A DNA stretch of 64,000 nt, taken from NCBI GenBank assembly GCA_965644495.1, contig CBFFSA010000009.1:62001-126000 (forward strand), in the 5' to 3' direction. Numbering within the stretch: position 1 is the stretch's first letter; every line of letters begins with the position of its first letter. A program made the position numbers and the translations under genes. Below, in pieces: positions 2,232 through 63,880 of this stretch. Source of the DNA: Perkinsela sp. CCAP 1560/9 (Eukaryota; Protista; Euglenozoa: Kinetoplastea). The notes under the pieces are model-generated. The model made no database searches. It was given only the letters and a program-made list of their open reading frames with translations, and was not told the DNA's origin.

Positions 2232-3824
2232 ATGAATCGCGTTACCGACACGCGTGATGAACAGTCACCCCCTGTTAAACGTAGGAAACTGCATCAAGAT
2301 GTCCCACATAACACGGCACCTTATCCATCTACTCGCCCCGGGAAAATACACGGGGCTGTTCTACCGCAAGAATATGACCTGGAACGAGTTATTGCGGACG
2401 TATTGCATCCTAACCCATCCTGGACGACATCCACAGCTGCGTGCGAATGGGCAAGAGTGGGATGTAATGAACATGGAGAGGTGACGGAACTTATGTGGGA
2501 CGCTGATTCCGATATCTGGGTTTGGCGATACTCGGGCGAATTGCATTTAGAACATCTTCCCAGGACCGTTTTGCGAGTATCCGCCACAGGGAACGATTTT
2601 TCTGGATCCGTTTGTTTAGATAATTTGCCGCCGAACCTGACGTACCTTAAGCTCAGTTTCAACGATTTTGCTGGTACAGTAAATTTTTCTCTTTTTCCGC
2701 CAACGTTGCAAGTCATTAATTTGGAATTTAACTTGTTTGAAGGTGGCATTGATTTGGGTAGCCTCCCAGCAAAGTTGAGGATATTGACGTTGACTAGAAA
2801 TCAGTTTTTTTCAGGCACCAATCAGTCTGCCCAGGACATGGATCTTGGTGCCCTGCCGGTACACATGGAAGTTTTCAATGTAGCTGAAAACAAGTTTTCA
2901 GGTAGGCTACACCTGAATAATTTGCCAGACACGCTTAAAGACCTGACTGTGCTAGATAACGAATTGACAGGTACGCTTGATTTGCAAGGTCTGCCATCAT
3001 CACTCGAGCTAGTAGATCTTTCAGAAAACCAGTTCGAAGGATCTCTGCAGTTGAATTCCCTTCCCCAGAACCTTAAATTATTTGCCGCGTCGGGCAACAA
3101 GTTTACGGGTATAACGAGTCTAGATACACTACCAAATGAACTGTACAAGTTGGATCTTTCCGAAAATCAGTTGGCGGGGACGTTAGACTTACGGCACTTA
3201 CCAGAGGAGCTTGAAGACCTTAACCTTTCGCGTAACGCATTCACGGGAGAGATCGATCTCCGCTCCCTACCTGATTCTCTTACCCACCTCCTTTTGTACC
3301 GTAACAAGCTATCTGGATCACCAGATCTCAGTGATTTGCCCGAGGAACTAACTTTTATGGACATCAGCAATAATGAATTTGTGGGTTCGTTTAAATTAGA
3401 TACACTTCCACCTTCACTTGAGAGTTTACGAATCAAACGCAATCAATTTACGGGCAATCTTCACCTCATCGATTTGCCTGACTCCTGCGTTGTTTTTATC
3501 GCTAGCCATAATAAGTTTTCGGGAGCCCTAGATCTGCAGGATATGCCGATCGGGCTTCAAACTCTAAAATTTGATCACAATGGCTTTAGCGATGTCACCG
3601 GTCTCATATCGCTCCCTAAAACGCTTGAAACTCTTTTGCTAAACCATAATTGTTTGGAAGGGAATATCCCACTCGATTCTCTCCCCGACACGTTATTGAC
3701 TTTAGCGTTAAGCGATAACCCAGAGCTCCATGGATTTGTCAGTCAAAAGGTACGGCGGTCCATAAATATATTGTTGGACAGAACTCATATTGGGATTGTC
3801 AAAGACCTGGGAAATGGCGAATAA
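2232..3824 (+). CDS. LRR protein subfamily A (A1), 530 aa, ~17 24-residue LRRs with N-terminal cap
   Basis: Intact ATG-stop ORF; SWxxSTxACEWxxVxC cap; repeats LPxxLxxLxLxxNxFxGxLDL; basic PPVKRRK near N-terminus; paralogue at 28721. Confidence 0.95.
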   Translation: MNRVTDTRDEQSPPVKRRKLHQDVPHNTAPYPSTRPGKIHGAVLPQEYDLERVIADVLHPNPSWTTSTAACEWARVGCNEHGEVTELMWDADSDIWVWRYSGELHLEHLPRTVLRVSATGNDFSGSVCLDNLPPNLTYLKLSFNDFAGTVNFSLFPPTLQVINLEFNLFEGGIDLGSLPAKLRILTLTRNQFFSGTNQSAQDMDLGALPVHMEVFNVAENKFSGRLHLNNLPDTLKDLTVLDNELTGTLDLQGLPSSLELVDLSENQFEGSLQLNSLPQNLKLFAASGNKFTGITSLDTLPNELYKLDLSENQLAGTLDLRHLPEELEDLNLSRNAFTGEIDLRSLPDSLTHLLLYRNKLSGSPDLSDLPEELTFMDISNNEFVGSFKLDTLPPSLESLRIKRNQFTGNLHLIDLPDSCVVFIASHNKFSGALDLQDMPIGLQTLKFDHNGFSDVTGLISLPKTLETLLLNHNCLEGNIPLDSLPDTLLTLALSDNPELHGFVSQKVRRSINILLDRTHIGIVKDLGNGE

Positions 3825-4003
3825 CTGTAAGGATGCGAAGACCACGTAGGGCGTTATGACGTGCATTGTTGCGCTCAATGTGTCAGAGAAGACATACTAA
3901 AAATGCGAATGTATGTGTGTGATATTAGACAATATGTGAGTTTCAACGTTTTTTGAAAGTATGGGAATGATAGGCCCGAAAATCGAAATTTCTATTTTAA
4001 TTC

Positions 4004-4090
4004 TACAGGGGTCAAAATCCCATGGCGGGGGAGTCTAAAATGCGTAAAATTTGTTCGATTTTGGAAAATAATAGCGCATTCGAGAGCCCC
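4004..4090. mobile_element. Isolated Tc1-type terminus (TA-CAGGGG)
   Basis: Matches termini at ~33785, ~53400 and (inverted) 27385-27470, sharing the TTTTGGAAAATAATAGCGCATTCGAGAGC subterminal block. Confidence 0.6.
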
Positions 4091-4289
4091 CACCACGAGG
4101 TTTTCATCCCTGTTCTTCCACGCTTCCTGTTCAGAGAATAAGCTTTTTCAGAAACAGCTGGCTAGGGTTGTTTGTTCATTTATTTCAATGCAGAGTGTTT
4201 ATGTTATTGTTCCCGCAAACAACGGACTTATCCACTTTTTCCTAAGCTGAAACACCACTTTCCGGTGTTCATTCCGCCTACGTAAGAGG

Positions 4290-8340: not shown

Positions 8341-8377
8341 TTCAAGGCTCGTGGTAATTTTGTAGTTATAAATAAGT

Positions 8378-8985: not shown

Positions 8986-10266
8986 ATGCTTTGTAGCGTT
9001 TCTGCTGCGGATATTACAGTGTTTTGGTGTTCATGCGCTCGTTGGCGCAGAGATACAGCCCTTGATGCGACAGCCGATATCATCGGCACAATCCGTAATG
9101 ACGGATGTCGCACCAAGGGGGTTTAGCTCGGACTCTGTCGGTAGAGGGGGTCCAGGCAACTCGCCCTCTCTTTACGCAGCCGGAGGGGCGCACTGCAACC
9201 GACCGCTGCCTCGCGATAAGACGAGGCAGAGCCACGCCCAGTGGTGCTCAAGGGAGGCCACCATGGCGCATGACTCCCCGGGAAGGAAAGGGCGCGAAGG
9301 GAAGAAAGCCGGGGAGGGAAGATAACACACTCAAAGAGTGAGCCGGGGAGGGGTGATGGGGTGGAAGCGCGTCCCCTACTTCGCCGAGAAAGAGGGACAG
9401 TTTCGGCCGTAGTGCCGGCCGGCAACGGACATATTAACAGTAAGACTATGCCCGTTGCCGGGGAAAGAAAAGATGAACTAAAGGAAAATGTACCAACAAG
9501 ATACAGAAACTGTATCTACATTTGTATATACAAAGTGTATATACACTATATATCCCACTATACAAGACGAGCAGCTAGAGTCAGCAAGGCGAATCTCCCA
9601 CAGGAATACGAACTTGCACTACTCGTACAGAATATTGAGAATACACATTGTTCATGGAATACATCAACTCCTGCTTGTAATTGGGATGGCGCGGATTGTA
9701 ATAAGGCGAATGAGATTACGTCTATATATTGGAACGGGTATTTAAATAAGTCATACAAAGATCTCACTGGATCGTTGAATTTTGGTTATCTCCCAAATAC
9801 AGTATACACGTTCAGTTTTTTTCTTACTAAACTTTCGGGCGAAGTTCCACTGAGCACATTGCCCTGTAAGTTAGGTGTTTTGATTCTAGCTTACAATGAT
9901 TTTAGTGGACCATTGGACTTGACAACTCTCCCTCCGAATATGAACAAGCTGAACCTCTCCGGTAACCGATTTACAGGTGAAATTTGCTTAGATAGATTGC
10001 CTCCTGGGTTGAAATATCTCAGTCTTGACTGTAATCAGTTATCAGGAAACCTTTGTCTACGTGATCTCCCAAACTTGTACGATCTTCGACTATTCACGAA
10101 TAGGTTTTCCGGCAAAATTGACGTAAGAAGCCTTCCAAGTACATTGCACCAGCTCGATTTGTCAAACAACGTAAATCTGCATGGCGAGATAGAAAAGCGC
10201 CTGCTTCCCAATATGGCTGGCTTTAATCTCAACATTAGAAACACGAATATTACTTTACTTTTCTAA
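8986..10266 (+). pseudogene. LRR protein subfamily B (B1), N-terminus split by a ~535-bp insertion
   Basis: ATG 8986 MLCSVSAADIT aligns to the B2 start; homology resumes at ~9553 (SHYTRRAARVSKANLPQEYEL); the LRR part is open to the stop at 10266. Confidence 0.8.
9020..9552 (+). other. GC-rich insertion in LRR-B1, possibly the 3' end of a DIRS-type element
   Basis: Absent from paralogue B2; no TIR or TSD; QPISSAQSVMTDVAPRG weakly resembles a DIRS RNase H C-terminus. Confidence 0.4.
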
Positions 10267-13719: not shown

Positions 13720-14406
13720 ATGCTTTGTAACGTTTCCGCTGCGGATATTACAGAATCCCACGCAACACGAAGAGCAGGTAGAGTCAGCAAGGCGAATCTC
13801 CCACAAGAATACGAACTTGCACAACTCGTACAGAATATTGAAAATCCACATCCCTCGTGGAATACGTCAACCCCTGCTTGCGAGTGGGACGGCGTGTATT
13901 GTGATGTAGCGAGTGAGATTAAGTCTATAAAGTGGAACGTTTATTCAGGGAAGTCATACCAACAACTCACTGGGTCGTTGAGTTTTGTTTATCTCCCAAA
14001 GACATTACGCAAGTTTGATGTTTTTCTTACTAAACTTTCGGGCGAAGTTCCACTGAACACTTTGCCCTACAGGTTAAAATCTATGAATCTTCGGAACAAT
14101 AATCTTAGTGGACCATTGGACTTGACAGCTCTCCCTCCGATTTTCAAAAAGCTGGTCGCCTCCGGTAACCGATTTACAGGTGAAATTTGCTTAGATAAAT
14201 TGCCTTTGGGGTTGAAATATCTCTTTCTTGACTGTAATCAGTTATCAGGAAAAGTGTGCTTATGTAATCTTCCAAGTACATTGTACCTGCTCGATTTGTC
14301 AAGCAACGTAAATCTGCATGGCGAGGTAGAAAGGCGTCTGCTTCGAGAGATGGATGGATTTCATCTCACGGTTAGAAATACGAGTATTACACGTATAGGA
14401 CCGTAG
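13720..14406 (+). CDS. LRR protein subfamily B (B2)
   Basis: ATG 13720 (MLCNVSAADITES); cap SWNTSTPACEWDGVYC; ~5 LRRs, one fewer than B1. Confidence 0.9.
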   Translation: MLCNVSAADITESHATRRAGRVSKANLPQEYELAQLVQNIENPHPSWNTSTPACEWDGVYCDVASEIKSIKWNVYSGKSYQQLTGSLSFVYLPKTLRKFDVFLTKLSGEVPLNTLPYRLKSMNLRNNNLSGPLDLTALPPIFKKLVASGNRFTGEICLDKLPLGLKYLFLDCNQLSGKVCLCNLPSTLYLLDLSSNVNLHGEVERRLLREMDGFHLTVRNTSITRIGP

Positions 14407-14750: not shown

Positions 14751-15546
14751 GGTAGAGTGAGTGCGATGAATCTCCCACAAGATTTCTCTAGCTCATGTTT
14801 TCTTTTCCCGGAAGCGGACATACTCTTAACCTCTTATGTATGTCCTTTTCCGGTTGACGCCAGGACCGGAAACTCATCTTTCCGTTGAAGAGGGGCCGGC
14901 CGCTTCCCACACCTGTGCAGCGCGTCAGACGCGCCGAATCCTTCGAATGCTCCGGCTGGATGAACGCCGGGGAGAGCCTCTCAACGACGCTGCGTAGCCG
15001 AAAGGTTTCTTGCAGGCTCTCAACGACGCCCCCCGCAGTGGAAATCCTGTATAGGCCGAATCCCTGCGTACGACCGGCGTTGAAGGCGCCGCAATGGCCG
15101 TTGAGAACGGTCGTCGTATAGTCAGGCGTATATCTCTACAGGCGTCTGTCTGTATGAACAAAAAATAATGAATATAGTGGATCATTGTGCTTGATGAATC
15201 TCCCTCCGAATTTGCAAAATCTGGACCTCTGCGCTAACCGATTTACAGGCGAAATTTGTGTTTCCGAATGTACCTATCCGTCAGGGGAGAAATATTTCTG
15301 TCTTGACTGTAATCAGTTAGCAGGAGAACTTTGTTTAAGTCACCTCCCAAGCCGAACCTATCCTCGCCTTTTCAAGAACAATTTATTGTGAGATTTTGAC
15401 ATAAGCAGCATTCTACATGTATGTACTTTGAATGAGCTTTGTCGAACAACGTAAATCTGCATGGCGAGATACGAGCGTATCTACTTTCCCACGAGCTTAG
15501 TGTTCTCATGATACAAGATGCCACCATTACACTTGCAACACCGTAG
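14751..15546 (+). pseudogene. LRR subfamily B pseudogene
   Basis: RVSAMNLPQ at ~14755; LRR remnants 15180-15546 with frameshifts; middle replaced by unrelated GC-rich DNA (~14790-15178). Confidence 0.75.
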
Positions 15547-16939
15547 AACGATCCAAATATTATTAGATACTGTGCCGGAAGCAGGACGGAAAATACCAAG
15601 ACATGACTTTTATGTTTCTTAACCTATGCAATATTCCTTTACTTACTTTTTATTCCTTACTTACTTTGGCTACAAATGCACGCTACATGGAATTGTAGTC
15701 ATGTTGCAAACGTACAATCTCGATATCCTCTAAATTTCCTTTTCCCAGTGCAAAGGCAATGGCACTCCGCCTAGCACATAGGGCGGAAGAACTTAGCTAC
15801 TCGAGCACGACTAGAGCACGCGGTATCGCATACAGTTGTGTCGATCAATAATAATCAATAATCAATATAAATTTATATTATAATTATAATAAATTTATAA
15901 TATAATCATTAAAATGCTCAATTGTATCACGCAAGCACGAGCCGTGCGTCCTGAAATTTTAGCCTCCTTCAAAGATCGTGCGGGTTGCCCGCGTGCACGC
16001 TAATGAAGGAATAGGGCGTGTAATTTGCCGGTTGCATGTCGAATAATGCCGCTATTCGTTCATGCTTTTGGCCAATACGCAGCTATTTCGTTCATGAGGC
16101 ATTGGCCCTGATATCACACCCGCGGCCTTGTAACATTAAAATAGTTGCATCTGTAGTACTTTGCAACGATTTTTCCCGCTGAATGAAGAATTGTCTCTCA
16201 GCGTTGCCTGGCTTTGGTAAAAGCAACACTAGGAGGGGGGGTTAAGAGGAGAAGCCAAGGATGCTGTGGGATGTGGTATGGGATGTGGTGGTGGGGATGC
16301 GTTACTGTCTTTCATTTCCGAAACATTGCAGAAAGCATACATGTATTAAAAATTCAATTAAATTAATGCTTCTATATCATTGACACGAGAAATCTTAAGA
16401 TGAAATACATGTTTAGTCATTCAATTCAATAGGCAGAAAATTGCGTCCCGTCAGACAAGTAGGCGTTCGTAAATCTAAGACCTGATAAAAAGTTTTCATC
16501 ACTTGGATTGACACTGGGTAAAACCATAGAAAATCCCAGATAAGAAGACGAAAGAAACAGTTAGCCAAAAATGGAGCTGTGGACCTAAAACGCTTAGGGA
16601 ACATTAAATCAAGACAACATACAAGAATGTTGTATATAAGAAAATAAAATCAAGAGTATAAGATGAAGAGAATGGCACACAAATCATACTGAAACTGTAG
16701 TTGCTTCTGGAGCCTTTGGCACCCAACTTTCGCAAACTGTCATACGAGTGACGACATCTTCACACTGAACCGAATACGGTACAGGTTATTTACCACATGA
16801 GAACCGAACGAGTTTTCATGACCTCTTTGCTGTGGACAATTCATGTAAACCGGGGGTCACTCCAATATCAAAATCAAGGTTCGATATTAAGCTAGCAATT
16901 TTGATATTAAACCCCTCCACAAGAATAAGACAGCCCCTC

Positions 16940-28720: not shown

Positions 28721-30313
28721 ATGAATCGCGTTACCGAGACGCGTGATGAACTGTCACCCCCTGTTAAACGTAGGAAAGTGCATCAAGATGTCCCACATAA
28801 CATGGCACCTTATCCATCTACTCGCCCCGGGAAAGTACACCGGGCTGTTTTACCGCAAGAATATGAGCTGGAACGAGTCATTGCGGACGTACTGCATCCT
28901 CACCCATCCTGGACGACATCCACAGCTGCGTGCAATTGGGCTGGAGTAGTGTGTAATGAACATGGAGAGGTCACGGAACTTATGTGGGGCGCGGATTCAG
29001 AACATGAGACATACGGGCCATTTTATGGCGCATTGCATTTAGAACATCTTCCCAGGACCGTTTTGCGAATATCCGTATCGGAGAGAGATTTTTCTGGATC
29101 CGTTTGTTTAGACAATTTGCCGACGAATCTCACGTACCTTAATCTCAGTTTCAACGGCTTTACTGGCGCAGTAAATTTTTCTCTTTTTCCGCCAACGTTG
29201 CAAGTCATTAATTTAGAAGTTAACATGTTTGAAGGTGGTATAGATTTGGGTAGCCTCCCAGCAGAGTTGAGGATATTGGAACTTGGGGGAAATCAATTTT
29301 TCTCAGGCACGATTCAGTCTGAAGAGGACATGGATCTTGGTGCCCTGCCAGTTCAGATGGAAACTTTCAATGCTGAACAAAACAAGTTTTCAGGTGAGTT
29401 ACACCTGAGTAATTTGCCAGACACGCTTAAACACCTGAGTGTGCAAGATAACGAATTGACGGGTACACTTGATTTGCAAGGTCTGCCATCATTACTCGAG
29501 GATGTAAATCTTTCTCAAAATTGGTTTTGTGGTTCTCTACAGCTGGATTCCCTTCCTGAGAACCTTACCTCATTTATCGTGTCGGGCAACAAGTTTACGG
29601 GCGTGTCGAGTCTAGATAAGTTACCAACCGGGCTGACCGATTTGAATCTTTCCAAAAATGCGTTGACCGGAACGTTAGACTTACGGCACTTACCCGATAC
29701 GCTTGAAGAACTTACCCTTTCGCGTAACGCATTCACGGGAGAGATCGACCTACGCTTCCTACCTGATTCTCTTACCCATCTCTTTTTGTACCGCAACAAG
29801 CTATCTGGATCACCAGATCTCAGTGAATTCCCTGAAGGGTTAATTGAGCTGGACATCAGCGATAATGAATTTGTGGGTTCCTTTAAATTAGATGCACTTC
29901 CACCTTCACTTGAGATTTTACGAATCAAACGCAATCAATTTACGGGTAATCTTCACCTCAACGACCTCCCCGAGGCTTGCTCTGAATTTATCGCTAGCCA
30001 TAATAAATTTTCAGGCGCGCTGAATTTGCAAGATATACCGGTCGGGCTTCGAACTCTAAAACTTGACCACAATTGCCTTACCGGTGTGTCTGGCTTTACT
30101 TCTCTCCCTGAATATTTAGGAAAGCTTTTACTTAACCATAACTGCTTGGAAGGGAATATCCAACTCGATACGTTACCCGATACGCTATTATTGAATTTAA
30201 GCGATAACCCAAAGCTACATGGATATGTCAGTCACAAAGCACAGGAAGGTAGAAATATTACGTTTGAAAGGACTCATATTGTGATTGTGGAAGAGCAAAA
30301 TGAAAATTTATAG
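28721..30313 (+). CDS. LRR protein subfamily A (A2), 530 aa
   Basis: Intact ORF, colinear paralogue of 2232-3824 including ~60 bp of upstream sequence. Confidence 0.95.
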   Translation: MNRVTETRDELSPPVKRRKVHQDVPHNMAPYPSTRPGKVHRAVLPQEYELERVIADVLHPHPSWTTSTAACNWAGVVCNEHGEVTELMWGADSEHETYGPFYGALHLEHLPRTVLRISVSERDFSGSVCLDNLPTNLTYLNLSFNGFTGAVNFSLFPPTLQVINLEVNMFEGGIDLGSLPAELRILELGGNQFFSGTIQSEEDMDLGALPVQMETFNAEQNKFSGELHLSNLPDTLKHLSVQDNELTGTLDLQGLPSLLEDVNLSQNWFCGSLQLDSLPENLTSFIVSGNKFTGVSSLDKLPTGLTDLNLSKNALTGTLDLRHLPDTLEELTLSRNAFTGEIDLRFLPDSLTHLFLYRNKLSGSPDLSEFPEGLIELDISDNEFVGSFKLDALPPSLEILRIKRNQFTGNLHLNDLPEACSEFIASHNKFSGALNLQDIPVGLRTLKLDHNCLTGVSGFTSLPEYLGKLLLNHNCLEGNIQLDTLPDTLLLNLSDNPKLHGYVSHKAQEGRNITFERTHIVIVEEQNENL

Positions 30314-31771: not shown

Positions 31772-32506
31772 ATGCTTTACACCCTTCCCGCTGCGGATGT
31801 TACAGAATCACGCGTGGTGAGACGTGCCGCAAAAGTGAGTAACACGAACCTCCCCCAGGAGTACCAACTTGCACGACTTGTTCGCAATGTTGAGAATTCC
31901 TTTTCTTCGTGGAACACATCTACCCCTGCCTGTGAGTGGTACGGTGTGGATTGTAACAAAGAGGGCGAGATTATGTCCATAAAGTGGCCGATGAGTAAAC
32001 TGAAGGGTTCGTTAAGCTTTCGTTATCTCCCAGAAACCATGCACACCTTTTATGCATATGTAAACGAACTTTCCGGTGATGTTCCGCTAGGCACTTTGTC
32101 TTCCAGTTTGCACCGTTTGAGTCTTCGGGACAATGAGCTGAGTGGAACATTGGACTTGGCAGCTCTCCCTTTGAATTTGACCACGCTGATTCTTTCTGGT
32201 AACCGATTTACGGGTGAAGTGTGCTTAACCAGATTGCCCTCGGGGCTTCTCAATTTATGCCTTGGCAGAAACATGCTGTCCGGAGAACTTTACTTGAACG
32301 AATTACCTAATGTGATTATGCTCCGACTGGAAAATAATAATTTTTCAGGAAATGTTGACCTAAGTAGCCTGCCGGCTTCATTGGATGAGCTGGATTTGTC
32401 ATGTAACGTGAATCTTAGTGGTGAGGTTAAAAAATCTGTTCTTCCCGAAAAGCTATGTTCAGCTCTGCGAATTCGGAGCACGAAGATTGTACGTTGCGCT
32501 ACATAA
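31772..32506 (+). CDS. LRR protein subfamily B (B3), 244 aa
   Basis: Intact ORF; AADVTES leader, LPQEY, cap SWNTSTPACEWYGVDC, ~6 LRRs. Confidence 0.92.
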   Translation: MLYTLPAADVTESRVVRRAAKVSNTNLPQEYQLARLVRNVENSFSSWNTSTPACEWYGVDCNKEGEIMSIKWPMSKLKGSLSFRYLPETMHTFYAYVNELSGDVPLGTLSSSLHRLSLRDNELSGTLDLAALPLNLTTLILSGNRFTGEVCLTRLPSGLLNLCLGRNMLSGELYLNELPNVIMLRLENNNFSGNVDLSSLPASLDELDLSCNVNLSGEVKKSVLPEKLCSALRIRSTKIVRCAT

Positions 32507-36226: not shown

Positions 36227-37700
36227 ATGCCAAAAAATACATATCGACACCCGAGGGGTGGTCTTACAGAAAGTGGAATAGTGTTATTGCGCATGAGGTA
36301 TGGTCAGGGGGTTGCAAAGAAACAACTAGCTCGCGAGTTTAATGTTAATATAAAACATATTAGAAAATATTTGAAAAATGATTCGCTGGAAAATATTTAT
36401 ACTGAAAGCCCTGAAGTAAAAAAGAGGATGAAAAAAAGGAGAAATCTTGTTAAAATGCTCTTGAGCCTTTGGATCAAGCTGGGGTCTCATAAATGGGTCT
36501 TCTCGCAAGATTCGTGGAAAACTGAAGAGAAAGGGTGTAAACGTATCTTCTGACACCATCAATAGAGATATACGTTCCCTAGGCCACAAGTATGGGTCAC
36601 GGCCTTTGTCACAAGGACTGACGAAGGAAAAAGAAAAGGGTATTGTTTGCTTTAAAATGGTAAGAATTAAAATGGGACACCTCTCGTTTAGTTTTTACTA
36701 ACGAAAAGCTGTTCGATACAAATGATCATAGAAAAAAGATGTGGGTGACTCCAGGCAAAAAGCCCGCAAAGCGACAAACAGTGCGTTGGGCACCTAAGTG
36801 TCATGTATGGGGTGCCGTGGAGGTAGGCTATAGGAAACTTGTTGTTCTCTCTTCCAACTCAATTAGATGCGTTTCATAAATTTCATAAAATTATATCAAC
36901 ACACTAACTTTAAGGATCTTTATCTTTCGTGCAACGGGTTCACGGGGGAGATCGATCTTCGTTTCTTGCCTGATACGCTTAAACATCTTAACCTGAAGAA
37001 CAATAAGCTGTCTGGGTCATTAAATCTTAGTGCGTTACCGTTGCTGAATGGACTGGACATCAGTAATAATACGTTTGTGGGTCCTTTTAAATTAGACGCA
37101 CTTCCACTATCGCTCGAGATTATACGAATCAAACGCAATCAATTTACGGGCAATCTTCACCTCAGCGATATGCCCGAGTCCTGCTTTGCTTTTATTGCTA
37201 GCCATAATAATTTTTCAGGCGCGCTGAATTTGCAGAATATGCCGGAGGGTCTCAAAACTCTGAAGCTTGAAAGCACAATTGCTTTACCGGTGTGTCTGGT
37301 TTTGCTTCTCTTCCTGAAGATTTGGGAAAGCTTTTACTCAACCATAATTGTTTGGAAGGAAATATCCAACTCGATACGCTACCCGATATGCTATCCGTTT
37401 TGTCGTTAAGCAATAACCCAGGACTCTACGGAACTAAGCCAAAGAAACTAAGGCTTATCATGAAAAAAACCGAAATGACACTATTGCCAAATTGGCCACC
37501 GAACTCCCCTGATCTTTCCCCCATAGAAAGCGTGTGGAGTATGGTGCAAGAGCTTGTCGATGAGTACACTCCTTCAAATAAGGAAGATATCATAAAAAGT
37601 GTATGTAAAGCTTGGTCTAAATTACCTCAAGAATACATGTTGATGATTCGGTTTTGAGCTTCGATGCTCGGCTCAAGGCTGATATGGTACTTTCAAGGCT
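36227..37700 (+). pseudogene. Tc1 transposase pseudogene carrying a captured LRR-A segment
   Basis: HTH LAREFNVNIKHIRKY, FTNEKLFD, CHVWGAV, then the LRR segment, then WPPNSPDLSPIESVW. Confidence 0.85.
36912..37431 (+). pseudogene. Captured LRR-A fragment (~7 repeats)
   Basis: Aligns to A2 ~29705-30222 and A1 ~3213-3735 (GEIDLRFLPD...IKRNQFTGNLHL...NHNCLEGNIQLDTLPD); one frameshift at ~37272. Confidence 0.9.
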
Positions 37701-41336: not shown

Positions 41337-42059
41337 ATGATTGTCTCTATGCTCTCGGCCGATGTAACGGAACCGTTAAGAAAGAAAGCCTGGATAGAAA
41401 CGAACTCATCCGACACGACACTTTCAACGAGTAGTTCTAATGTGACTGGAACATCTCGTCCATCCAAAGTCAGTGCCGTGTCGTTACCCGTGGAGTACGA
41501 TTTGATAAGACTCGTAGAAATCCCTCCACGCTCGTGGTCCACCGATACCCCGGGATGTAGATGGGACCGAATCAGATGTAACGACAAGGGCGACGTGATT
41601 TCAATAAACTGGTATGGCAGAATGGGCGAAGACATTAGCAAGAACCTGCAAGGTCGGCTGAATGTAAAATATTTGCCGTCCGAGTTGGGAAACTTAAGCC
41701 TGCAGAACAACTTCCTGTCGGGTGAGTTTCTCTTCGATCAGTTGCCTCCGAAACTGGAATTCATTAACATATCCAACAACCAGTTCACGGGTACTCCAGA
41801 TTTTCGTCACCTGCCACCCTTTCTAGTCTATCTTAATATGTCTGACAATAAATTTTCTGGTCATATTGAATTCGATTTCGTGCACGAAAACATGCGCGAC
41901 ATAATTTTAGCTTTTAATGCAGAACTTGAAGGCTTCCTAAATATCAGAGACGAGTTAAAGAATCTGTATTATACTGTAGCGCGAACAAAGATTACGGTAA
42001 GCAATGGTGAGTTGACACGCTACAGACCGATCCCGCGTGTTTGTGGAATATGTAGGTAA
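41337..42059 (+). CDS. LRR protein subfamily C (C3), 240 aa
   Basis: Intact paralogue, closest to C2. Confidence 0.92.
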   Translation: MIVSMLSADVTEPLRKKAWIETNSSDTTLSTSSSNVTGTSRPSKVSAVSLPVEYDLIRLVEIPPRSWSTDTPGCRWDRIRCNDKGDVISINWYGRMGEDISKNLQGRLNVKYLPSELGNLSLQNNFLSGEFLFDQLPPKLEFINISNNQFTGTPDFRHLPPFLVYLNMSDNKFSGHIEFDFVHENMRDIILAFNAELEGFLNIRDELKNLYYTVARTKITVSNGELTRYRPIPRVCGICR

Positions 42060-48240: not shown

Positions 48241-49413
48241 TTACTTATGGATGTAAAACTGGTGAACCTGGAGGAGAGTACAAGTTGTTATCTTAGATAC
48301 CTGCCATCAAAATTTCACAAATAAGCGCTTCAAATAGATAATTGTTCTAATCCTACGTCAGTAAGGTTATCAAGCTCATGAGGCATGTATGTTTTAGTGA
48401 TTCTTCGGAACGTATATTGTTGATCACTTTGCCAAAGTGAGTTTCTAGAGCGCCTATAATTGTTTGACGTAGAACGCATTCGTGCTCAAAAACGAGTTCA
48501 TTGAACTTAAGAGTTTCATCCAGAGCGTGATCTCGGTCACTTTCACTCATTTCGAAAATGAAGCGAAAGCAGAGAAGTTTTTTCTCAACCCACCTTTTTG
48601 ATGATCTAACAACAACCGAAGTAAAGTCCACTAGAAAAATGGCCATTGTGGCTTGCACAAGTTGTCACTGGCTTGCAGTGGCAGTACACATGAGGTCGAT
48701 TAAGTAGTGTCAGGAAAGTAGTGAGGATTTTTTTCCTAAAAAATATTGATCGAATCGGTCGAAGTTGCATTTATAATTACTTATGAAAGACATAGGAATT
48801 ATAAGAGGGTTGAAACCTGTTAAGTTTTTCCGGGTTTTGCCAGGACACCTATTTTGGTGGGCATCATCTTGGGAGATGTGTCACGACTTAAAGAAGGGGT
48901 ATCTTGTGAAAAAAACGTCATAGAAAGATAGTACAGGTCCCAAACTCTCAAACTACTATACAAGTAAGTAATTTGGTTTTGAAAAACTATTTTTTAAGCC
49001 ATGTTTTTCGCCAAGTTGACTTTTTTTTCAATTTTCTTTTCAGAAAAAACCGAACTTGACGGCCCCGTCCTGTTGATACCAGGGGGAAAATGTGCGCCAA
49101 GACCTCGGCTACCCTTTCTGGGGGTTTATTTCGAGTTTTTCAAAATTTTCGTTTTTTGTGGCGCAAAAAATGTTTTGCAGCGCAGGATGATGACCAAGTA
49201 TGTTATTCACTAATTTTGACGAAGTACATTTCTTCGCCACGTCAATGAGGAATATGCGGGTTTTGCCAGGTTTTGCCTTTCATAGATTTCAACACTCTTA
49301 TTATTACAAATATTATTATTTCAGCTATGGAAAGTGCTTTAAAAGTGCTTTTCGAGCTTTTTTTAGTTTTCGAGCTTTCGAGCACATGTGTAGACCTTTA
49401 CCCTGCGGATGCT

Positions 49414-50143
49414 TCCTGAGGCCGTTTGAGCTGATTTTTGTTGCAAACGAGAGATCTCGTTCTGAATCTCGTGTCTACGCTATTTGGAGCCCATTTCTGC
49501 TAATCAAAAAAATATATATTTACAAAATATTGAAAATTTGGGCAAAATATTTTGCAAAAAGTATCGAAAAACGTAAAAAAGGCTATTTTTTCTTCTTTTT
49601 ACCTTACTATGGGCAAACGGAATAGACTAAACCGTCGCCAGCTATCACCAGAACAGTGTTCATATCCTGTGCGCATTGTCTGCGCACACGAAAGACACCG
49701 TGGGACATCTATTCCGGATACGGCACGTATGATGAACTGTTCAGAGAGCTCTGTCTCTCGGTACAAAGCGCGTTTCGATGAGTCAGGTGACGTGGCACGT
49801 GCACCCTACTCGCGCGATAACGGCGTTGATACGGAGGAGTTCCGAGCCACGCTATACTACGTGAGCGTGGAGGTGGGAATACTGGCTATTAAGACCTACT
49901 TTCTGGGAACTTTTTGGGCCGTGGTACGTAAAAATTACGAATTTTAGACCCGTTTTTCAAATTGCAAAATCTTTAAAATTTCACTTTTGTAACTCATTGG
50001 AAATGTTTTCCGGCGAACGTTTTTGTATTTTAAATAGCGTAGACACGATATTCAGAACAAGATCTCTCGTTTGCAACAAAAATCAGCTCAAACGGCCTCA
50101 GGACGCTAAAATGCGGACCTTGTCAGTTTTCGTGGCCCCCCTG
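49414..50143 (+). mobile_element. Second, further-deleted copy of the 'CAGGGGGGGCCACG' Tc1 family
   Basis: Left TIR lacks its first ~44 bp; right TIR ends CCCCCCTG-TA; lacks the equivalent of ~45490-45712. Confidence 0.85.
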
Positions 50144-50291: not shown

Positions 50292-51867
50292 GGGTAATAT
50301 GCAGTCAAACTGTACCCTAAATTTCATTTTTTTTTTACTTTTTTTTGTCAAATAAATATGTGTGATTAATTATTTACTTGATAGTTTTGAGTCATTTTCA
50401 CCCACTTTTAAGCTTTGTTTACGTCTTAAACCATTGAATGGACTGCTCAGGGTGTAGAACTTTTGCGTGCTTGACGCTAGTTACGTCAATTTTGCAAATA
50501 ACGTCAGAGAATGTTGTTTCCTGGCTAGTAAATCACTCTTTCGGGGCTTATACACAGTGTCTTCGCTGCAAAGAGAAACCGAGAAGCGATCAATGCTTCA
50601 AAAAACTCGAACGCGGTTCGAAGTGCCGCCTACAAATTCCGAAATTTGGCCCCTTTTTTCCTTTAAACTGTCGAATTGTTGATAAATTTCGATGTTGGCT
50701 GCTTCTAGCGCAAGGTAACCTGCCCTTGAACGCAGCTTTGCAAGCGCTCAGGTCTCTTCGTTCAGTTCTTACAGACCTAAGTGAAATTGAACGCATATTC
50801 AGCATTCCCCGTTCCCCGCACATGCTCATGAAGTACGTTATGGTGGATGAGACATACATTGGGAAACGCCTGCACCATCGCGGGAGACAAGTCCGCAAAC
50901 AAAAGTTCTGGTTTATGACGGCTACAGAGGTTGATCCAAACACCGGGAAATCATTGCAAACATACTGGGAGGCAACGGTTCGCCGAACGAGAGAGGTTTG
51001 CCACAGGTTTGTCCGATCAGTCATAGAAAATAGAAATGCCATGGTAATTACTGATGAGTGGGCTGCATATCGTGGAATCGATGCCTTTTGCCGACATTAC
51101 ACTATTTGCCACGCTGATGCATTCTCGCGAGAGCACTCCCCGCACGTCAGCATTCATATCAACAACGCAGAGTCTGCCCATGCCAGTGTAAAGGGTTACT
51201 GCAAGCGTTTTTTTCACAAATGGGGCAGAAGTTTGGAAAGCTGTCAGGCACGAGCGCATTTTATTTGCACGGTCTTCTTCAAGGCGGAAGCTAAAAAGCG
51301 TTTTCAGAACCTTATGACTGTTATGGCGAGATACTCCTCTGACAATAGCGCGGTATACGGAGATCAGTCAAATGAAGAAGATGCGGAAGTTTCCAGTGAC
51401 TCTAGTGAGGACCTTCAGGAAGATTATGAAAGCCCAACCACGCGACTAGGTCGAGCGCTCACTGAACATATACAGACTGTAAGACTCAAGCGCAGATATG
51501 GAAGGGATGAAATGGGATTCCACAAGTGTATGATAAAAAGTGCTACTGACCGCCACTACACTATTTATGTTGGTCCTGGTGGTGCTCGATGCACTTGCCG
51601 TGACGGACGTCTGGGCAATCGATGTAAGCATATATATTTCATTTTGATGCTGGAACTTGGGGTGGATGAAAACCATTCAGTTCTATTAAAATCGGAATTT
51701 TCATCAGAAGACCTATCGAATTTGTTGTAGACGAGGCAGAAATTATCGGTAAATCGTCTTATTTATATGCAAATTTGCGTAAAAACTAAAAAGGAACACA
51801 TATGTGATGGAAATATACAGTTTTTAGAAAAAACAAATTTAGGGTACATTTTGACTGCAGTTGACCC
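50292..51867 (+). mobile_element. Merlin (IS1595/ISXO2-like) DNA transposon, apparently complete
   Basis: ~33-bp TIR GGGT(AATA/CAAC)TGCAGTCAAA(C/A)TGTACCCTAAATTT; 8-bp TSD AAAAGGTT (50284-50291 / 51868-51875). Confidence 0.92.
50438..51730 (+). CDS. Merlin/ISXO2-like DDE transposase with C-terminal SWIM zinc finger, 430 aa
   Basis: VMVDETYIG, VITDEWAAY, HYTICH, HINNAESAH; acidic linker; YTIYV...CTC.D......CKHIYFIL. Confidence 0.88.
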   Translation: MDCSGCRTFACLTLVTSILQITSENVVSWLVNHSFGAYTQCLRCKEKPRSDQCFKKLERGSKCRLQIPKFGPFFPLNCRIVDKFRCWLLLAQGNLPLNAALQALRSLRSVLTDLSEIERIFSIPRSPHMLMKYVMVDETYIGKRLHHRGRQVRKQKFWFMTATEVDPNTGKSLQTYWEATVRRTREVCHRFVRSVIENRNAMVITDEWAAYRGIDAFCRHYTICHADAFSREHSPHVSIHINNAESAHASVKGYCKRFFHKWGRSLESCQARAHFICTVFFKAEAKKRFQNLMTVMARYSSDNSAVYGDQSNEEDAEVSSDSSEDLQEDYESPTTRLGRALTEHIQTVRLKRRYGRDEMGFHKCMIKSATDRHYTIYVGPGGARCTCRDGRLGNRCKHIYFILMLELGVDENHSVLLKSEFSSEDLSNLL

Positions 51868-59289: not shown

Positions 59290-59570
59290 TGCGAGCGGTC
59301 ATATTCTGTATCAAACGCGGATCTACACTCCATGCGAGCGGTTCGACGCTGTATCAAACAGCGGATCTACGCTCCTATAAATCGGCATGAGTGGCTAAAC
59401 GCTGCAGGAGCAGCGGATCTACACTACATGCGAGCGGTTCGACGCCGTATCAAACAGCGGATCTACGCTCCTATAAATCAGCATGAGTGGCTCCACGCTG
59501 CTAAAACAGCGGCTCCACATTCCATGCGAGCGGCTCCACGCTGTGTCAAACAGCGGCTCCACGCTCTATC
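59290..59570. repeat. Minisatellite of ~21-bp AGCGG(A/T/C)TC(T/G/C)AC subunits with a ~106-bp higher-order period
   Basis: 59312-59410 repeats at 59413-59515. Confidence 0.8.
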
Positions 59571-59637
59571 GAATCTGCTTGAATTCCGCCGAATTAGTTT
59601 TCGGATTTTGGTGCAGGCCGGGTTTCAAGCCCGGTGT

Positions 59638-59784
<147 letters not shown>

Positions 59785-59984
59785 NNNNNNNNNNNNNNNN
59801 NNNNNNNNNNNNNNNNNNNNNNNNNNNNNNNNNNNNNNNNNNNNNNNNNNNNNNNNNNNNNNNNNNNNNNNNNNNNNNNNNNNNNNNNNNNNNNNNNNNN
59901 NNNNNNNNNNNNNNNNNNNNNNNNNNNNNNNNNNNNNNNNNNNNNNNNNNNNNNNNNNNNNNNNNNNNNNNNNNNNNNNNNNNN
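59785..59984. other. Assembly gap (200 N)
   Basis: Run of n. Confidence 1.
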
Positions 59985-60380
59985 CAGGGGTATAGCACAC
60001 CCCACCTCCCTAGCTGTAACCTAACTCCTCTCCAAGCGGAGGTCAGCCGTAGCTTGCTATGGCTGGCTCTCCGGATACGTCGCAAGACGTATTCGGACTG
60101 CCCGTTTGGGGAGTTGAGGGGCCATAACTCTTCGGAGTCAAAAGGCACAATACATCTTCTCATCATGTAGCGGTTTGTTGTGCGACGCCGGGTGAGTTAG
60201 CTAGAATCAAGATGCCAACGATCGCACGCAATGAGACTTTGCCGGTGGATGTGAGGAGACTTCGCCAGTAGAACCGCAGATCCGTGCACTGATTTCGCCG
60301 TCCCGACAAAACCTCGGGAACGCAGCAATCGCAGACAAACCAGATCCGAGCTGAAAAGGGATTTGGGCGCCCTAGAATCA

Positions 60381-60600
60381 NNNNNNNNNNNNNNNNNNNN
60401 NNNNNNNNNNNNNNNNNNNNNNNNNNNNNNNNNNNNNNNNNNNNNNNNNNNNNNNNNNNNNNNNNNNNNNNNNNNNNNNNNNNNNNNNNNNNNNNNNNNN
60501 NNNNNNNNNNNNNNNNNNNNNNNNNNNNNNNNNNNNNNNNNNNNNNNNNNNNNNNNNNNNNNNNNNNNNNNNNNNNNNNNTGGCGCACCTCTTTTCGTCA
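60381..60600. other. Assembly gap (220 N)
   Basis: Run of n. Confidence 1.
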
Positions 60601-60619
60601 GCCGGATTCACCAAAGCGT

Positions 60620-61193
60620 GTACATCTTTTTCTCCTTTTTCAGAGACGGTCTTCAAGGATTTCATGGATCCTCTGGAGGGGACAACGGTATTTCATCGAA
60701 ATTGAAGATACAGCTGAAAAGTTTTGTTCTCAGAGAGCAGCAAATGAAAGTAAAAAAACTTCCCACCTTTTCCCGAAGTTGCTCCCTAGAAAGTTGCGTT
60801 TTTTTTGCACAATGCGTTGACTGAATGCGTATCGGTGCAAAAACCTGGATACCCAAGAATCACTAACAGTGCGAATGTTGTGCTGCTGGGCCTCGGGTTG
60901 TCGTCGGAGAATTCGAATTGCTTCTGATTTAACGTTTTCAAAAGTAACAAGTGCATTCGAATGACGTCTGCCTCGTATGTAACCTTCAAGGACTTCTTTG
61001 GTGCGCAACAATGGGTGTTTCTTGTGGTGTGCTTTACGCATCCCTTTGCTACGATCAATCGAACCCCAAGAAAGCAATTGCTCTTTGTGGCATACTTGAA
61101 ATCGTTCGTTTGACCACTTTTCAGCAATGAAAGCATTCATGTGGGGTATAAGACCTTTTTTGGAATCTTTTACATTCTGCGAGAGGCTTTGGT
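60620..61193 (-). pseudogene. pogo-like transposase fragment (CENP-B/Tc5-type HTH)
   Basis: KKHPLLRTKEVLEGYIRGRR...VSDSWVSRFLHRYAFSQRIVQK; IFNFDEIPL. Confidence 0.75.
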
Positions 61194-61611
61194 AAAAAGG
61201 GGGGGGATAGTAATATTTAAATAAAATTTAAATATTAACTTGCAGTTTAAATATTAAAGAGAATTTAAATATTAATCCGCATTTAAAAATTATTCCGCAC
61301 CCCGGGTTACTCTAAATTCTTTTTTAGGTTCCTCGTTAAACGCGGTGGTTGTTTTCAACTTAGAAGTCCCCTCATGCTGCGCGCTTCGCGTTGAAAAATA
61401 CCACCGCGCTTGACGAAGAGCCTAAAAAAGAAAAATTCGTTTCGAAAGCTGAAGAAAAAGGGAGGATTTGAGCCAAAAATGTCAGGGTTGGTAGTCCTAA
61501 TCTGGGCTTACCCAGAGAGGGTCCACCAACCCGTCATTATCACCACCTACGTAGGCACCTAGACACTGGTTCCAGGCCGGTGGGTGACAGGCATGCCTTT
61601 GGGGCTGTTGA

Positions 61612-61826
<215 letters not shown>

Positions 61827-61849
61827 TAACGCCCAATACGAATGGTATT

Positions 61850-62287
61850 GGAGCCGCGGATGCGTCGAAAACCTATGGTAAAGGAGGACTATTCTTTGAT
61901 ACGAACGGCACTCCATACGGTGAATGGAGTGAAACAAATGCGACAGAGGAAAGTGGAAGTGGTGCCTTCATTCTTGAAGTAAGAGCTCTTAGAATCGCCA
62001 TTGACCACGCGATTCACCTGCACAAAGAGGCGAAGATAAAGCGAATTGTTCTGGTTACGGACAACCAGGCGGCTCAGCACGCGATCAATGTGGGCTATTC
62101 AACGTCGAGTGAGGCCCTAAAGGAAATAAGAATCATTTTCCGAGCCAAAACAGCACATGAAATAGATCTTGAACTGTTATGGATAGCAGGAGACCTGAAT
62201 GCAGCCGATCCACCCTGGCGAGGAGTAGAGACTAATTATTTTCGAGATTCAGCCACCTGGAAAGTTCTAAAGTGTGCTGGCACTTAG
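61850..62287 (+). pseudogene. DIRS-type RNase H fragment
   Basis: AADAS..G.GG, ILEVRAL, VLVTDNQAA, LLWIAGDLNAADPPWR. Confidence 0.75.
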
Positions 62288-63142
62288 CATGGGAGGGACA
62301 AATACATGTATGCATGTATATGATATACATGATCTACATGTAATATCAGTCAAATCAATCCACGCACAATTCATAATACCATAGATCTTAATGCAGATGA
62401 ATTCTTAAGTAGCAATCCTAGTATAACAAACGTTCGTACACCCAATCGGACTGGTATACATATCCGTTTACCTAGCCGTGCGTGGTGTATCGGACCGATA
62501 CCCAATACACAAGCTGTAGCTCGGGCCAAAAAAAAACATGTTTTTACTCTACAACTTTCCTTTTCATATTTCATCTTTCATCTTTTTACTCTACAACTTC
62601 CCTGCGCTCGATTCATCCACCTCTATACAGTCCGGGTCAAACATCTCGGTCCATGATTGGACTCTCGTTTCTGAATACAACTTCTTTATGCGCCTGTAGT
62701 CTTCTTGTAGCTTCCGTTCTTCGCTGATGGCGTCTGCAATTTGGGACAAAGCTCCACGGCTATGTCGAGAGTCCCTCTTCTCATTCTTTTACCAAAGTTT
62801 TTGCAACTCGATTTCAACACCACCGCGTAGACGTTCGAAGTCCCTTATCTGGGCATGTTTGTGTAGATTCACGTAATGCTCATCCCGAGCTACCTTATCT
62901 GGGAGCTTTATATTCTATAAAGCTATATAAATGATATACAGGGGGACATTTGTCTGTGTAATACTAATCTGGAGAACATTAATCTGTATGATATTAATCT
63001 GTGTTAACTCGAAAATATTTGGCCCGACAGAAATCTGTGTTAAAAAAACAAGAATGCGCCGCAGGCGAAATTCTTCTTTTTCCATGCATTTTTACGTCTT
63101 TTTCTCGGAAATTTTCTTTTTTCTTGATTTGTATTTGTAATT

Positions 63143-63880
63143 ATGATTGTCTCTATGCTCTCGGCCGATGTAACGGAACCGTTAAGAAAGAAAGCCAGGA
63201 GAGAAACGAACTCATCCGACACGACACTTTCAACGAGTAGTTCTAATGTGACTGGAACATCTCGTCCATCTAAAGTCAGTGCCGTGTCGTTACCCGTGGA
63301 GTACGATTTGATGAGACTCGTAGAAAACCCTCCACCGTCATGGTCCACCGATACCCCGGGATGTAGCTGGGATGGGGTCACATGTAACGACAAGGGCGAC
63401 GTGATTTGGATAACCTGGGGTCACATGATGGGCTCTACTACTAGTTTCTCTAGCGAGAAACTACAAGGCCAGTTCAATGTAAAATATTTGCCGTACGAAT
63501 TGGAAATTTTACGGCTAACGTTCAATTCTCTATCGGGTGAGTTTCCCTTTGATCAGTTGCCTCCGAAATTGAAAGACATTAACATATCCTTCAATCAGTT
63601 CACGGGTACTCCAGATTTTCGTCACCTGCCACCCTTTCTAGTCTATCTTAATATGTGTGACAATAAATTTTCTGGTCATATTGAATTCGATTTCGTGCAC
63701 GAAAACTTGCGCGACATAATTTTAGCTTTTAATACAGAACTTGAAGGCTTCCTAAACATCAGAGACGAGTTAAAAAATCTGTATTATACTGTAGCGCGAA
63801 CAAAGATTACGGTAAGCAACGGTGAGATGACACGCGACAGACCGAGTCCGCGTGTTTATGGAATGTGTGGACTAAGGTAA
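63143..63880 (+). CDS. LRR protein subfamily C (C4), 245 aa
   Basis: Intact paralogue closest to C1, with a 5-aa insertion (TTSFS) in the variable loop. Confidence 0.92.
   Translation: MIVSMLSADVTEPLRKKARRETNSSDTTLSTSSSNVTGTSRPSKVSAVSLPVEYDLMRLVENPPPSWSTDTPGCSWDGVTCNDKGDVIWITWGHMMGSTTSFSSEKLQGQFNVKYLPYELEILRLTFNSLSGEFPFDQLPPKLKDINISFNQFTGTPDFRHLPPFLVYLNMCDNKFSGHIEFDFVHENLRDIILAFNTELEGFLNIRDELKNLYYTVARTKITVSNGEMTRDRPSPRVYGMCGLR

What the first reader, a model, noticed from the sequence alone, without database searches (positions are those of the whole stretch)
2232..63880. Single-strand array of LRR genes with a shared hypervariable loop: candidate diversified receptor/effector system
Seen: all 11 LRR genes or fragments across 62 kb are on the + strand and intronless, while the TEs lie on both strands. 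The full-length genes share an R..(K/R)(V/I)...LP(Q/V)EY.L leader and a Cys cap. The loop after the conserved Trp varies in length and sequence: DADSDIWVWRYSG, GADSEHETYGPFYG, NGYLNKSYKDLTG, NVYSGKSYQQLTG, PMSKLKG, GHMMGSSEKLQG, SGAMGEDTSKKLQG, YGRMGEDISKNLQG, GHMMGSTTSFSSEKLQG. Repeat number also varies. Known: LRR concave faces and protruding loops determine ligand specificity in plant receptors and agnathan VLRs. Inference: a rapidly diversifying recognition repertoire in a protist.
Basis: partly seen in the sequence, partly recalled or inferred. Interest (0 to 1): 0.8.

Follow-up and report, generated by a model that had tools for sequence, protein, structure and literature searches.

The report
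Large LRR gene family in kinetoplastid
The window holds eleven members of a family of at least about 650 small leucine-rich-repeat genes in a kinetoplastid-type protist; they share a strand because the whole genome is built of one-directional gene blocks, and their variation looks like ordinary germline duplication, gene conversion and relaxed constraint, not a special diversifying mechanism.

Summary
The window has nine intact LRR ORFs and two fragments, all on +. Every quoted loop, the leader and the Cys pair are there. Both assembly gaps lie in CT-repeat/TE space between genes.

- Strand: this follows from genome architecture. The genome carries a kinetoplastid spliced-leader core. LRR genes switch strand only 7 times in about 127 neighbour pairs. 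18 of 18 protein-kinase genes inside LRR blocks share the block's strand.
- Loop: it is an indel-prone insertion in the first repeat, where the wider family has a canonical 7 residues. Its dN/dS (0.76) equals that of concave positions (0.74). That is above scaffold (0.12) and convex (0.48) positions, but not above 1.
- Diversity: it comes from duplication, whole-repeat gain or loss, loop indels and gene conversion (clear mosaics in subfamily C).
- Location: no signal peptide, membrane segment or GPI tail, so a surface receptor is unsupported. A disordered leader with a KRRK-type motif is conserved across genomes.

Family size is at least about 650 genes in 21 Mb. Transcription is suggested but not proven.

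The scan found this family before on other DNA of this genome (s1-682876).

The parts
2232..3824 (+). A1, 530-aa LRR gene (leader, cap, 13-aa loop at 2499-2537, about 18 repeats of 23 aa, C-cap)
9448..10266 (+). B1, LRR gene whose native 5' end is replaced; the head of an antisense SL-headed retroposon ends at 9512
13720..14406 (+). B2, 228-aa LRR gene (ATG start), one repeat fewer than B1 and B3
15122..15568 (+). Fragment 1: decayed, frameshifted B-like LRR relic
28721..30313 (+). A2, 530-aa LRR gene, 75% identical to A1
31772..32506 (+). B3, 244-aa LRR gene with the canonical 7-aa first-repeat segment
34841..35563 (+). C1, 240-aa LRR gene; mosaic with C2, C3, C4 and a copy 78 kb upstream
36867..37594 (+). 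Fragment 2: 3' third of an A-type gene, frameshifted, flanked by and fused in frame to pieces of a Tc1-like transposase; with C1 it is part of a 96-99% (DNA 99% over the fragment, protein 96% for C1) segmental duplicate on contig C59
39535..40257 (+). C2, 240-aa LRR gene
41337..42059 (+). C3, 240-aa LRR gene, tandem to C2 (1802-bp period)
63143..63880 (+). C4, 245-aa LRR gene; loop at 63419-63469 carries a 5-aa insertion relative to C1
59785..60580 (.). Two 200-N assembly gaps (59785-59984, 60381-60580) in CT-repeat/TE space; not inside any LRR gene

Best explanation
The window is part of a directional gene cluster of at least 150 kb in a spliced-leader-using, Perkinsela-like kinetoplastid genome. 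The cluster is filled with transposons and with members of a family of at least about 650 (roughly 800) small intronless genes. Each gene encodes a soluble protein with four parts: a disordered N-terminal leader, a plant-type LRRNT_2-like cap with a Cys pair, 3 to 18 very regular 23-residue LRRs, and a C-terminal cap. The leader has a short hydrophobic start, a D(V/I)(T/Q)E(P/S) motif, a KRRK-type basic patch and R..K(V/I)S. The genes share a strand because genes in this genome, LRR or not, lie in long one-directional blocks, read as polycistronic units with trans-splicing (inferred from kinetoplastid biology). Diversity is germline and arises by birth-and-death. The steps shown are gene-sized and segmental duplication, gene conversion between paralogs that yields mosaics, gain or loss of whole repeats, and indels in the first repeat (the 'loop'). 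Substitution is near-neutral at concave-face positions while scaffold residues are strongly conserved. The proteins most likely act as intracellular protein-binding modules with varied specificity, possibly nuclear because of the KRRK motif. Their ligands are unknown. Family membership, architecture, strand logic, selection pattern and mosaicism are shown. Localisation, binding function and polycistronic expression are inferred.
For: Genome type: the kinetoplastid SL 3' core is present 502 times against 1 in the control, and it matches the published prokinetoplastid SL core (PMC7859406). Strand: there are 7 strand switches among about 127 adjacent LRR pairs. On contig C9, 24 of 24 genes are + up to 152 kb, then 12 of 12 are - from 194 kb. 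18 of 18 protein-kinase genes inside LRR blocks share the block's strand. LRR homologs in two other assemblies lie in same-strand clusters with LSM, NTF2, SPT5-KOW and thymidylate-synthase genes. Family size: the cap motif occurs 673 times against 22 in the control, 29 of 36 local caps carry it, and all 150 scored profile hits have E<1e-27. Selection, from 10 independent paralog pairs: scaffold omega 0.12, convex 0.48, cap 0.54, leader 0.47, concave 0.74, loop 0.76. By repeat position, 2/3/5 are about 0.9, 22/23 about 0.8, and scaffold positions (1, 4, 9, 11, 13, 17, 20, 21) are 0.08-0.18. Indels concentrate in the loop: 8 gap columns per 105 loop columns against 1 per 1172 in the repeats, Fisher p=1.4e-8. 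Mosaicism: the nearest paralog changes along the C genes with 100%-identical blocks, and a PHI-like test gives P<0.001. Fold: AF2 mean pLDDT 83.6, leader disordered, loop 71-76. The nearest solved structures are plant SERK/BIR/PSKR ectodomains. No TM segment and no hydrophobic C-tail. The leader motifs are conserved in homologs P0001 and P0004 from another assembly. Expression hints: contigs of run X1 lie only on the ORFs of A2, B3 and C1 and not on high-copy repeats. A cluster-mate at 90% identity or more to P0004 is a Paramoeba atlantica MMETSP transcript.
Against: The invariant Cys pair and the LRRNT_2 cap are typical of extracellular, disulfide-bonded plant LRR domains, which sits uneasily with a cytosolic or nuclear location. 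A short hydrophobic N-terminus before a conserved motif could be an unconventional targeting or processing signal. No polypyrimidine-tract excess was seen upstream of the genes. Run X1 is RNA only by the tool's guess, and contigs cannot show strand or trans-splicing. dN/dS comes from only 36 genes on one contig arm, and gene conversion can bias pairwise estimates. The 95% intervals for the loop (0.42-1.62) and concave positions (0.51-1.07) do not exclude values at or above 1 at individual sites.
Confidence: 0.72

Rival explanations
1. Host-directed effectors. The kinetoplastid is an endosymbiont living free in an amoeba's cytoplasm. On this reading it exports these LRR proteins into the host, where the KRRK motif takes them to the host nucleus, and the repertoire diversifies through co-evolution with host targets.
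For: A close homolog is labelled as a Paramoeba atlantica holobiont transcript. An NLS-like KRRK motif and a conserved N-terminal module are retained across genomes. Concave positions evolve fastest. The Perkinsela genome paper proposes secretion into the host cytoplasm as a hypothesis (PMC5601477).
Against: No signal peptide or other recognised export signal is present. No omega above 1 was found. No localisation data exist. An NLS would serve equally in the organism's own nucleus. That this genome is an endosymbiont's rests on earlier notes and on one cluster label, not on a test made here.
Confidence: 0.12
2. Programmed diversification or variant-expression system, VLR-like cassette assembly or VSG-like switching. 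On this reading most copies are silent donors for one or a few expressed genes.
For: Hundreds of co-oriented variant genes lie in TE-rich arrays. Paralogs have mosaic structure. Two gene fragments are present.
Against: Nearly all copies are complete ORFs with their own start, cap and C-cap, under purifying selection on the scaffold. The fragments are a decayed relic and a Tc1-associated truncated copy, not cassettes. Independent DNA runs give the same B3 sequence, with 1 difference in 2379 bases. There are no surface-anchoring signals. The variable loop sits in the first repeat, not in a C-terminal cap as in VLRs.
Confidence: 0.03
3. Largely functionless expansion. On this reading the family grew by drift and by hitch-hiking with the dense transposon load, and most copies are on their way to decay.
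For: The region is about 85% non-LRR, mostly TE. Young pairs have gene-wide omega of 0.16-0.73. Two of eleven loci are fragments and one is 5'-truncated. Earlier notes report retrotransposons that target these repeats (not tested here).
Against: Scaffold omega is 0.12, and leader and cap are about 0.5. 142 of the 150 best hits have no internal stop. Leader motifs are conserved in another genome at 34-48% identity. There is a transcript-level hint.
Confidence: 0.08

Closest known systems
Plant-type (LRRNT_2-capped) LRR ectodomains, e.g. SERK/BIR co-receptors, RLPs, PGIP
   Same: LRRNT_2 cap with a C-x-W-x-G-V-x-C-like Cys pair; an LxxLxLxxNxFxGxLxLxxLP repeat; a small capped solenoid. Foldseek's best hits are SERK1/2, BIR2/3, SOBIR1 and PSKR (prob 1.0, TM up to 0.73 on the target). 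The fastest-evolving residues lie on the beta-sheet face.
   Different: No signal peptide, TM segment, kinase or GPI signal. The repeat is 23 residues, not 24. There is a disordered leader with a KRRK motif. The host is a kinetoplastid, the copy number is in the hundreds, and the genes are intronless.
Leishmania PSA-2/GP46 and related kinetoplastid LRR surface families (bodonin relatives)
   Same: A kinetoplastid LRR multigene family in tandem same-strand arrays with variable repeat number. These are regarded as binding proteins (PMC4728078).
   Different: PSA proteins are secreted or GPI-anchored surface antigens. The proteins here lack both signals. Direct sequence relatedness was not tested.
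Kinetoplastid directional gene clusters / multigene-family compartments (T. brucei VSG arrays, T. cruzi surface-gene compartments)
   Same: Long same-strand arrays of variant paralogs interspersed with retroelements, gene conversion producing mosaics, and convergent strand-switch regions.
   Different: Most copies here are intact rather than pseudogenes. No surface signals are present, and no expression-site logic is evident.
Agnathan variable lymphocyte receptors
   Same: LRR solenoid in which concave residues and a protruding, length-variable insert vary between copies.
   Different: VLRs are assembled somatically from cassettes into an incomplete germline gene, and their variable insert is in LRRCT. 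Here each gene is complete in the germline and the insert is in LRR1.

Membership tests
Plant-type capped LRR (Pfam LRRNT_2 + LRR_1/LRR_4) | LRRNT_2 cap match above Pfam's cut-off | tested here: met
   21.6-24.0 bits against a cut-off of 20.7 in three of the six LRR genes scanned (B2, B3, C4); the Cys pair is invariant
Plant-type capped LRR (Pfam LRRNT_2 + LRR_1/LRR_4) | LxxLxLxxNxLxGxIP-type repeat | tested here: met
   201 units give L..L.L..N.F.G.L.L..LP.., period 23
Plant-type capped LRR (Pfam LRRNT_2 + LRR_1/LRR_4) | Fold like solved plant LRR ectodomains | tested here: met
   AF2 pLDDT above 90 over residues 50-235; Foldseek top hits are SERK/BIR/PSKR
Plant-type capped LRR (Pfam LRRNT_2 + LRR_1/LRR_4) | Secreted or extracellular (signal peptide, often TM) | tested here: not met
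   No hydrophobic segment reaches TM level in intact genes; N-termini have only 5-15 hydrophobic residues
Kinetoplastid polycistronic directional gene cluster | Long blocks of co-oriented genes of unrelated function, with strand-switch regions | tested here: met
   7 switches in about 127 LRR neighbour pairs; 18 of 18 kinase genes agree with the block strand; the C9 switch lies between 152 and 194 kb
Kinetoplastid polycistronic directional gene cluster | Spliced-leader trans-splicing | tested here: inconclusive
   The SL core sequence is present 502 times against 1 in the control, but no SL-mRNA junction on an LRR gene was observed
Kinetoplastid polycistronic directional gene cluster | Polycistronic primary transcripts | not testable with these tools
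   Only contigs of a run guessed to be RNA were available
Agnathan VLR-type somatic assembly | Incomplete germline gene plus donor cassettes | tested here: not met
   Nine of eleven loci are complete ORFs; the fragments are a decayed relic and a TE-associated truncation
Agnathan VLR-type somatic assembly | Somatic variants in clonal cells | not testable with these tools
   Contigs drop rare variants
Leishmania PSA-2/GP46 | Signal peptide and GPI anchor or secretion | tested here: not met
Leishmania PSA-2/GP46 | Sequence homology beyond generic LRR | not tested

The most novel reading that the evidence does not exclude
A repertoire of roughly 800 soluble, NLS-bearing, capped LRR proteins is used by a eukaryotic endosymbiont (a Perkinsela-like kinetoplastid). 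Either it acts on its amoeba host after unconventional export, or it serves as an intracellular recognition repertoire, for example against the genome's own very active retroelements or viruses. On this reading, gene conversion among arrayed paralogs is the engine of specificity change.
Probability: 0.1. Interest if true: 0.85.

Novelty: new member of a known kind. Interest (0 to 1): 0.42.

Why it matters
An LRR family of this size, several hundred genes in a 21-Mb genome, is not mentioned in the Perkinsela or prokinetoplastid genome papers I could search. It would be one of the largest gene families in any kinetoplastid. It combines a cap typical of extracellular plant receptors with proteins that lack secretion signals. 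If the organism is the Paramoeba endosymbiont, these proteins are obvious candidates for host-symbiont interaction. For the scan, the useful result is negative: co-orientation in such genomes is architectural and should not be read as evidence of a dedicated system.

Tried and rejected
- Telomere context: the (C8-9 TGGA)n repeat at the start of contig C9 is not a telomere. It occurs 143 times, mostly inside contigs, so it is a TE end, and 'subtelomeric' was dropped.
- Splice-acceptor signal: polypyrimidine tracts upstream of the 36 genes are no stronger on the sense strand than on the antisense strand (Wilcoxon p=0.37), which is uninformative.
- Rfam on the window: no hits.
- PTS2-type glycosomal signal in the leader: the spacing does not fit (inspection).
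dN/dS therefore rests on 36 genes of C9:1-256000.
- Exact look-up of the window's proteins: only B2 and B3 were found, on an unnamed 64.6-kb ENA contig, with no transcript record.
- The exhaustive protein-representative search was not run, because no claim here rests on absence of relatives.
Full report
**1. What is in the window**

Searching the window with its own LRR proteins, and then with 36 family members from the same contig, finds eleven LRR loci, all on the + strand. Nine are single uninterrupted ORFs. They fall into three subfamilies:
- A: 530 aa, starting at 2232 and 28721.
- B: starting at 9448, 13720 and 31772.
- C: 240-245 aa, starting at 34841, 39535, 41337 and 63143.

Two loci are fragments, at 15122-15568 and 36867-37594. 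Pfam gives LRRNT_2 plus LRR_1/LRR_4.

The two assembly gaps (59785-59984 and 60381-60580) lie in CT-microsatellite/TE sequence between genes. ORFs that read through them are repeat artefacts. I could not test continuity across the gaps. Only the linkage of the last gene to the rest depends on it.

**2. Anatomy of the proteins**

A position matrix refined on 201 repeat units gives a very regular 23-residue unit, L..L.L..N.F.G.L.L..LP...

An AlphaFold2 model of the 245-aa gene was built on a 33-sequence alignment.
- Mean pLDDT is 83.6.
- Residues 1-45 are disordered.
- The cap and solenoid (residues 50-235) score above 90.
- The loop scores 71-76.

'LP.EY.L' is the first helix of the cap, not a separate leader. 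The nearest solved structures are small plant LRR ectodomains: SERK1/2, BIR2/3, SOBIR1 and PSKR.

The 'loop' occupies positions 7-13 of the first repeat. Most of the wider family has a canonical 7-8 residues there. Subfamilies A, B and C carry insertions of up to 10 extra residues.

No intact gene has a segment hydrophobic enough for a TM helix or a classical signal peptide, and the C-termini are hydrophilic. The leader holds four elements:
- a short hydrophobic start,
- a D(V/I)(T/Q)E(P/S) motif,
- a KRRK-type basic patch,
- R..K(V/I)S.

The same elements occur in homologs P0001 and P0004 from another assembly, at 34-48% identity.

**3. Why one strand**

The genome is 21.0 Mb in 110 contigs, and the window is C9:62001-126000. 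It contains the conserved 3' core of the kinetoplastid spliced leader 502 times, against 1 for the reversed control. Most copies are heads of retroposons. The core agrees with the published prokinetoplastid SL (PMC7859406).

LRR genes are co-oriented in blocks of hundreds of kilobases.
- Among the 150 best cap matches I count 7 strand switches in about 127 neighbour pairs.
- On C9, 24 of 24 cap-bearing ORFs are + from 1.7 to 152 kb.
- From 194 kb on, 12 of 12 are -, and further - copies extend to 641 kb.

An independent test used protein kinases. All 18 kinase genes that lie inside an LRR block have that block's strand.

In two other assemblies, LRR homologs sit in dense same-strand clusters with LSM, NTF2, SPT5-KOW and thymidylate-synthase genes.

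Co-orientation is therefore a property of the genome, namely directional and presumably polycistronic gene clusters. TEs are exempt from it.

**4. Family size**

The DNA motif for C-x-W-x4-C-(N/D) occurs 673 times, against 22 for the control. It is carried by 29 of the 36 local cap ORFs. That gives at least about 650 genes, and roughly 800 after correction. All 150 scored profile hits have E<1e-27, and only 8 of them have an internal stop.

**5. Is the loop hypervariable, and is selection positive?**

I pooled Nei-Gojobori counts from ten phylogenetically independent paralog pairs (dS 0.04-0.50). The resulting omega values are:

| Class | omega | 95% interval |
|---|---|---|
| scaffold | 0.12 | 0.08-0.18 |
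| convex | 0.48 | 0.34-0.70 |
| cap | 0.54 | 0.34-0.89 |
| leader | 0.47 | 0.29-0.77 |
| C-terminus | 0.53 | 0.38-0.77 |
| concave | 0.74 | 0.51-1.07 |
| loop | 0.76 | 0.42-1.62 |

- Loop plus concave exceed the other non-scaffold classes (bootstrap P=0.025).
- Their pooled omega is below 1 (P(omega>=1)=0.045).
- By repeat position, positions 2, 3 and 5 are about 0.9, and 22 and 23 about 0.8.
- The convex side (positions 10-19) is 0.08-0.5.

The binding face and the loop therefore evolve almost neutrally on a strongly conserved scaffold. Positive selection is not shown. What is special about the loop is indels: 8 gap columns per 105 loop columns, against 1 per 1172 in the repeats (Fisher p=1.4e-8).

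**6. How diversity arises**

Duplications are gene-sized, covering the gene plus 100-600 bp of flank, at 81-95% DNA identity. One recent segmental duplicate on contig C59 covers C1 (96% protein identity) and fragment 2 (99% DNA identity).

B2 lacks exactly one repeat unit.

The six C genes on C9 are mosaics.
- The nearest relative of each gene changes along its length, with 100%-identical blocks shared between copies up to about 107 kb apart.
- 3040 of 14365 informative-site pairs are incompatible.
- A PHI-like permutation test gives P<0.001.
- The two loop haplotypes segregate independently of the flanks.

This is germline gene conversion or unequal exchange, as in other arrayed families.

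**7. The fragments**

Fragment 1 is a frameshifted B-like relic.

Fragment 2 is the 3' third of an A-type gene. It lies between the 5' part and the 3' end of a Tc1-like element, and its C-cap is fused in frame to the transposase C-terminus. The same LRR/Tc1 junction ends four tandem A-type genes on C59.

B1's native 5' end is cut by the head of an antisense SL-headed retroposon.

None of these looks like a donor cassette.

**8. Expression**

Run X1 is labelled RNA only by the tool's guess. Its contigs lie on the ORFs of A2, B3 (both with exact matches) and C1. They do not lie on intergenic DNA, not even on a repeat that is thousands-fold deep in the DNA runs.

A cluster-mate of homolog P0004, at 90% identity or more, is a Paramoeba atlantica MMETSP transcript.

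This suggests transcription, and it suggests a Paramoeba-Perkinsela context. It proves neither.

**9. Comparison and verdict**

The proteins work like other germline LRR binding repertoires. By sequence and fold they are plant-type capped LRRs. They fail the 'secreted/extracellular' feature of that group and of Leishmania PSA. They also fail the defining features of VLR-type assembly.

The papers I could search on Perkinsela and prokinetoplastid genomes do not mention such a family.

The scan had already described the family on another piece of this genome (s1-682876). My independent measurements agree with that note. Earlier notes on retrotransposons that target these repeats were not tested here.

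I file this as a new member of a known kind. The specific claims of a dedicated single-strand array and of a uniquely hypervariable loop are largely explained away.

Noticed in passing
window 36227-37657: Chimera: the 5' part of a Tc1-like transposase, then a 3' piece of an A-type LRR gene, then the Tc1 3' end. The LRR C-cap is fused in frame to the transposase C-terminus (WPPNSPDLSPIE motif). The same LRR/Tc1 junction ends four tandem 546-aa LRR genes on contig C59.
   Followed up: partly
window about 9300-9512 (minus strand): A retroposon whose head is a partial spliced leader (ATACAGTTTCTGTATCTTGTTG followed by the same sequence as in L003/L004). It is inserted antisense into the 5' end of LRR gene B1. 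Earlier notes described such elements as inserting in the gene's own direction.
   Followed up: partly
G000:C9:157900-186300 (L016-L019): The convergent strand-switch region between the + and - LRR blocks holds about five tandem copies of a 5.4-kb unit with three ORFs that have no Pfam match. Next to it is an APE-plus-RT LINE on the minus strand.
   Followed up: partly
window 43079-45494 and 47437-49853: 2417-bp direct repeat at 99.9% identity, 4.4 kb apart: a very young duplication or element pair.
   Followed up: no
window 50438-51730 (+): Intact 430-aa ORF with an IS1595/ISXO2-like DDE domain plus a SWIM finger (Merlin-type). Merlin transposons have been reported in Perkinsela (PMC8101967, listed, not read).
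   Followed up: no
G000:C9:1-110 and 143 other places: The (C8-9 TGGA)n repeat at the contig start is dispersed through the genome, so it is the end of a repeat family and not a telomere.
   Followed up: yes
window 59332-62287: Long (CT)n microsatellites flank both assembly gaps and probably caused them. An RNase H-like ORF follows at 61580-62287.
   Followed up: no
G000:C20:166385-178795 and C59:16784-34204: Perfect tandem arrays of LRR genes: five copies at a 2922-bp period on C20 and four at a 5220-bp period on C59. Within each array every copy listed with an internal TGA gives the same score, so the stop probably predates the amplification (its position was not compared).
   Followed up: no
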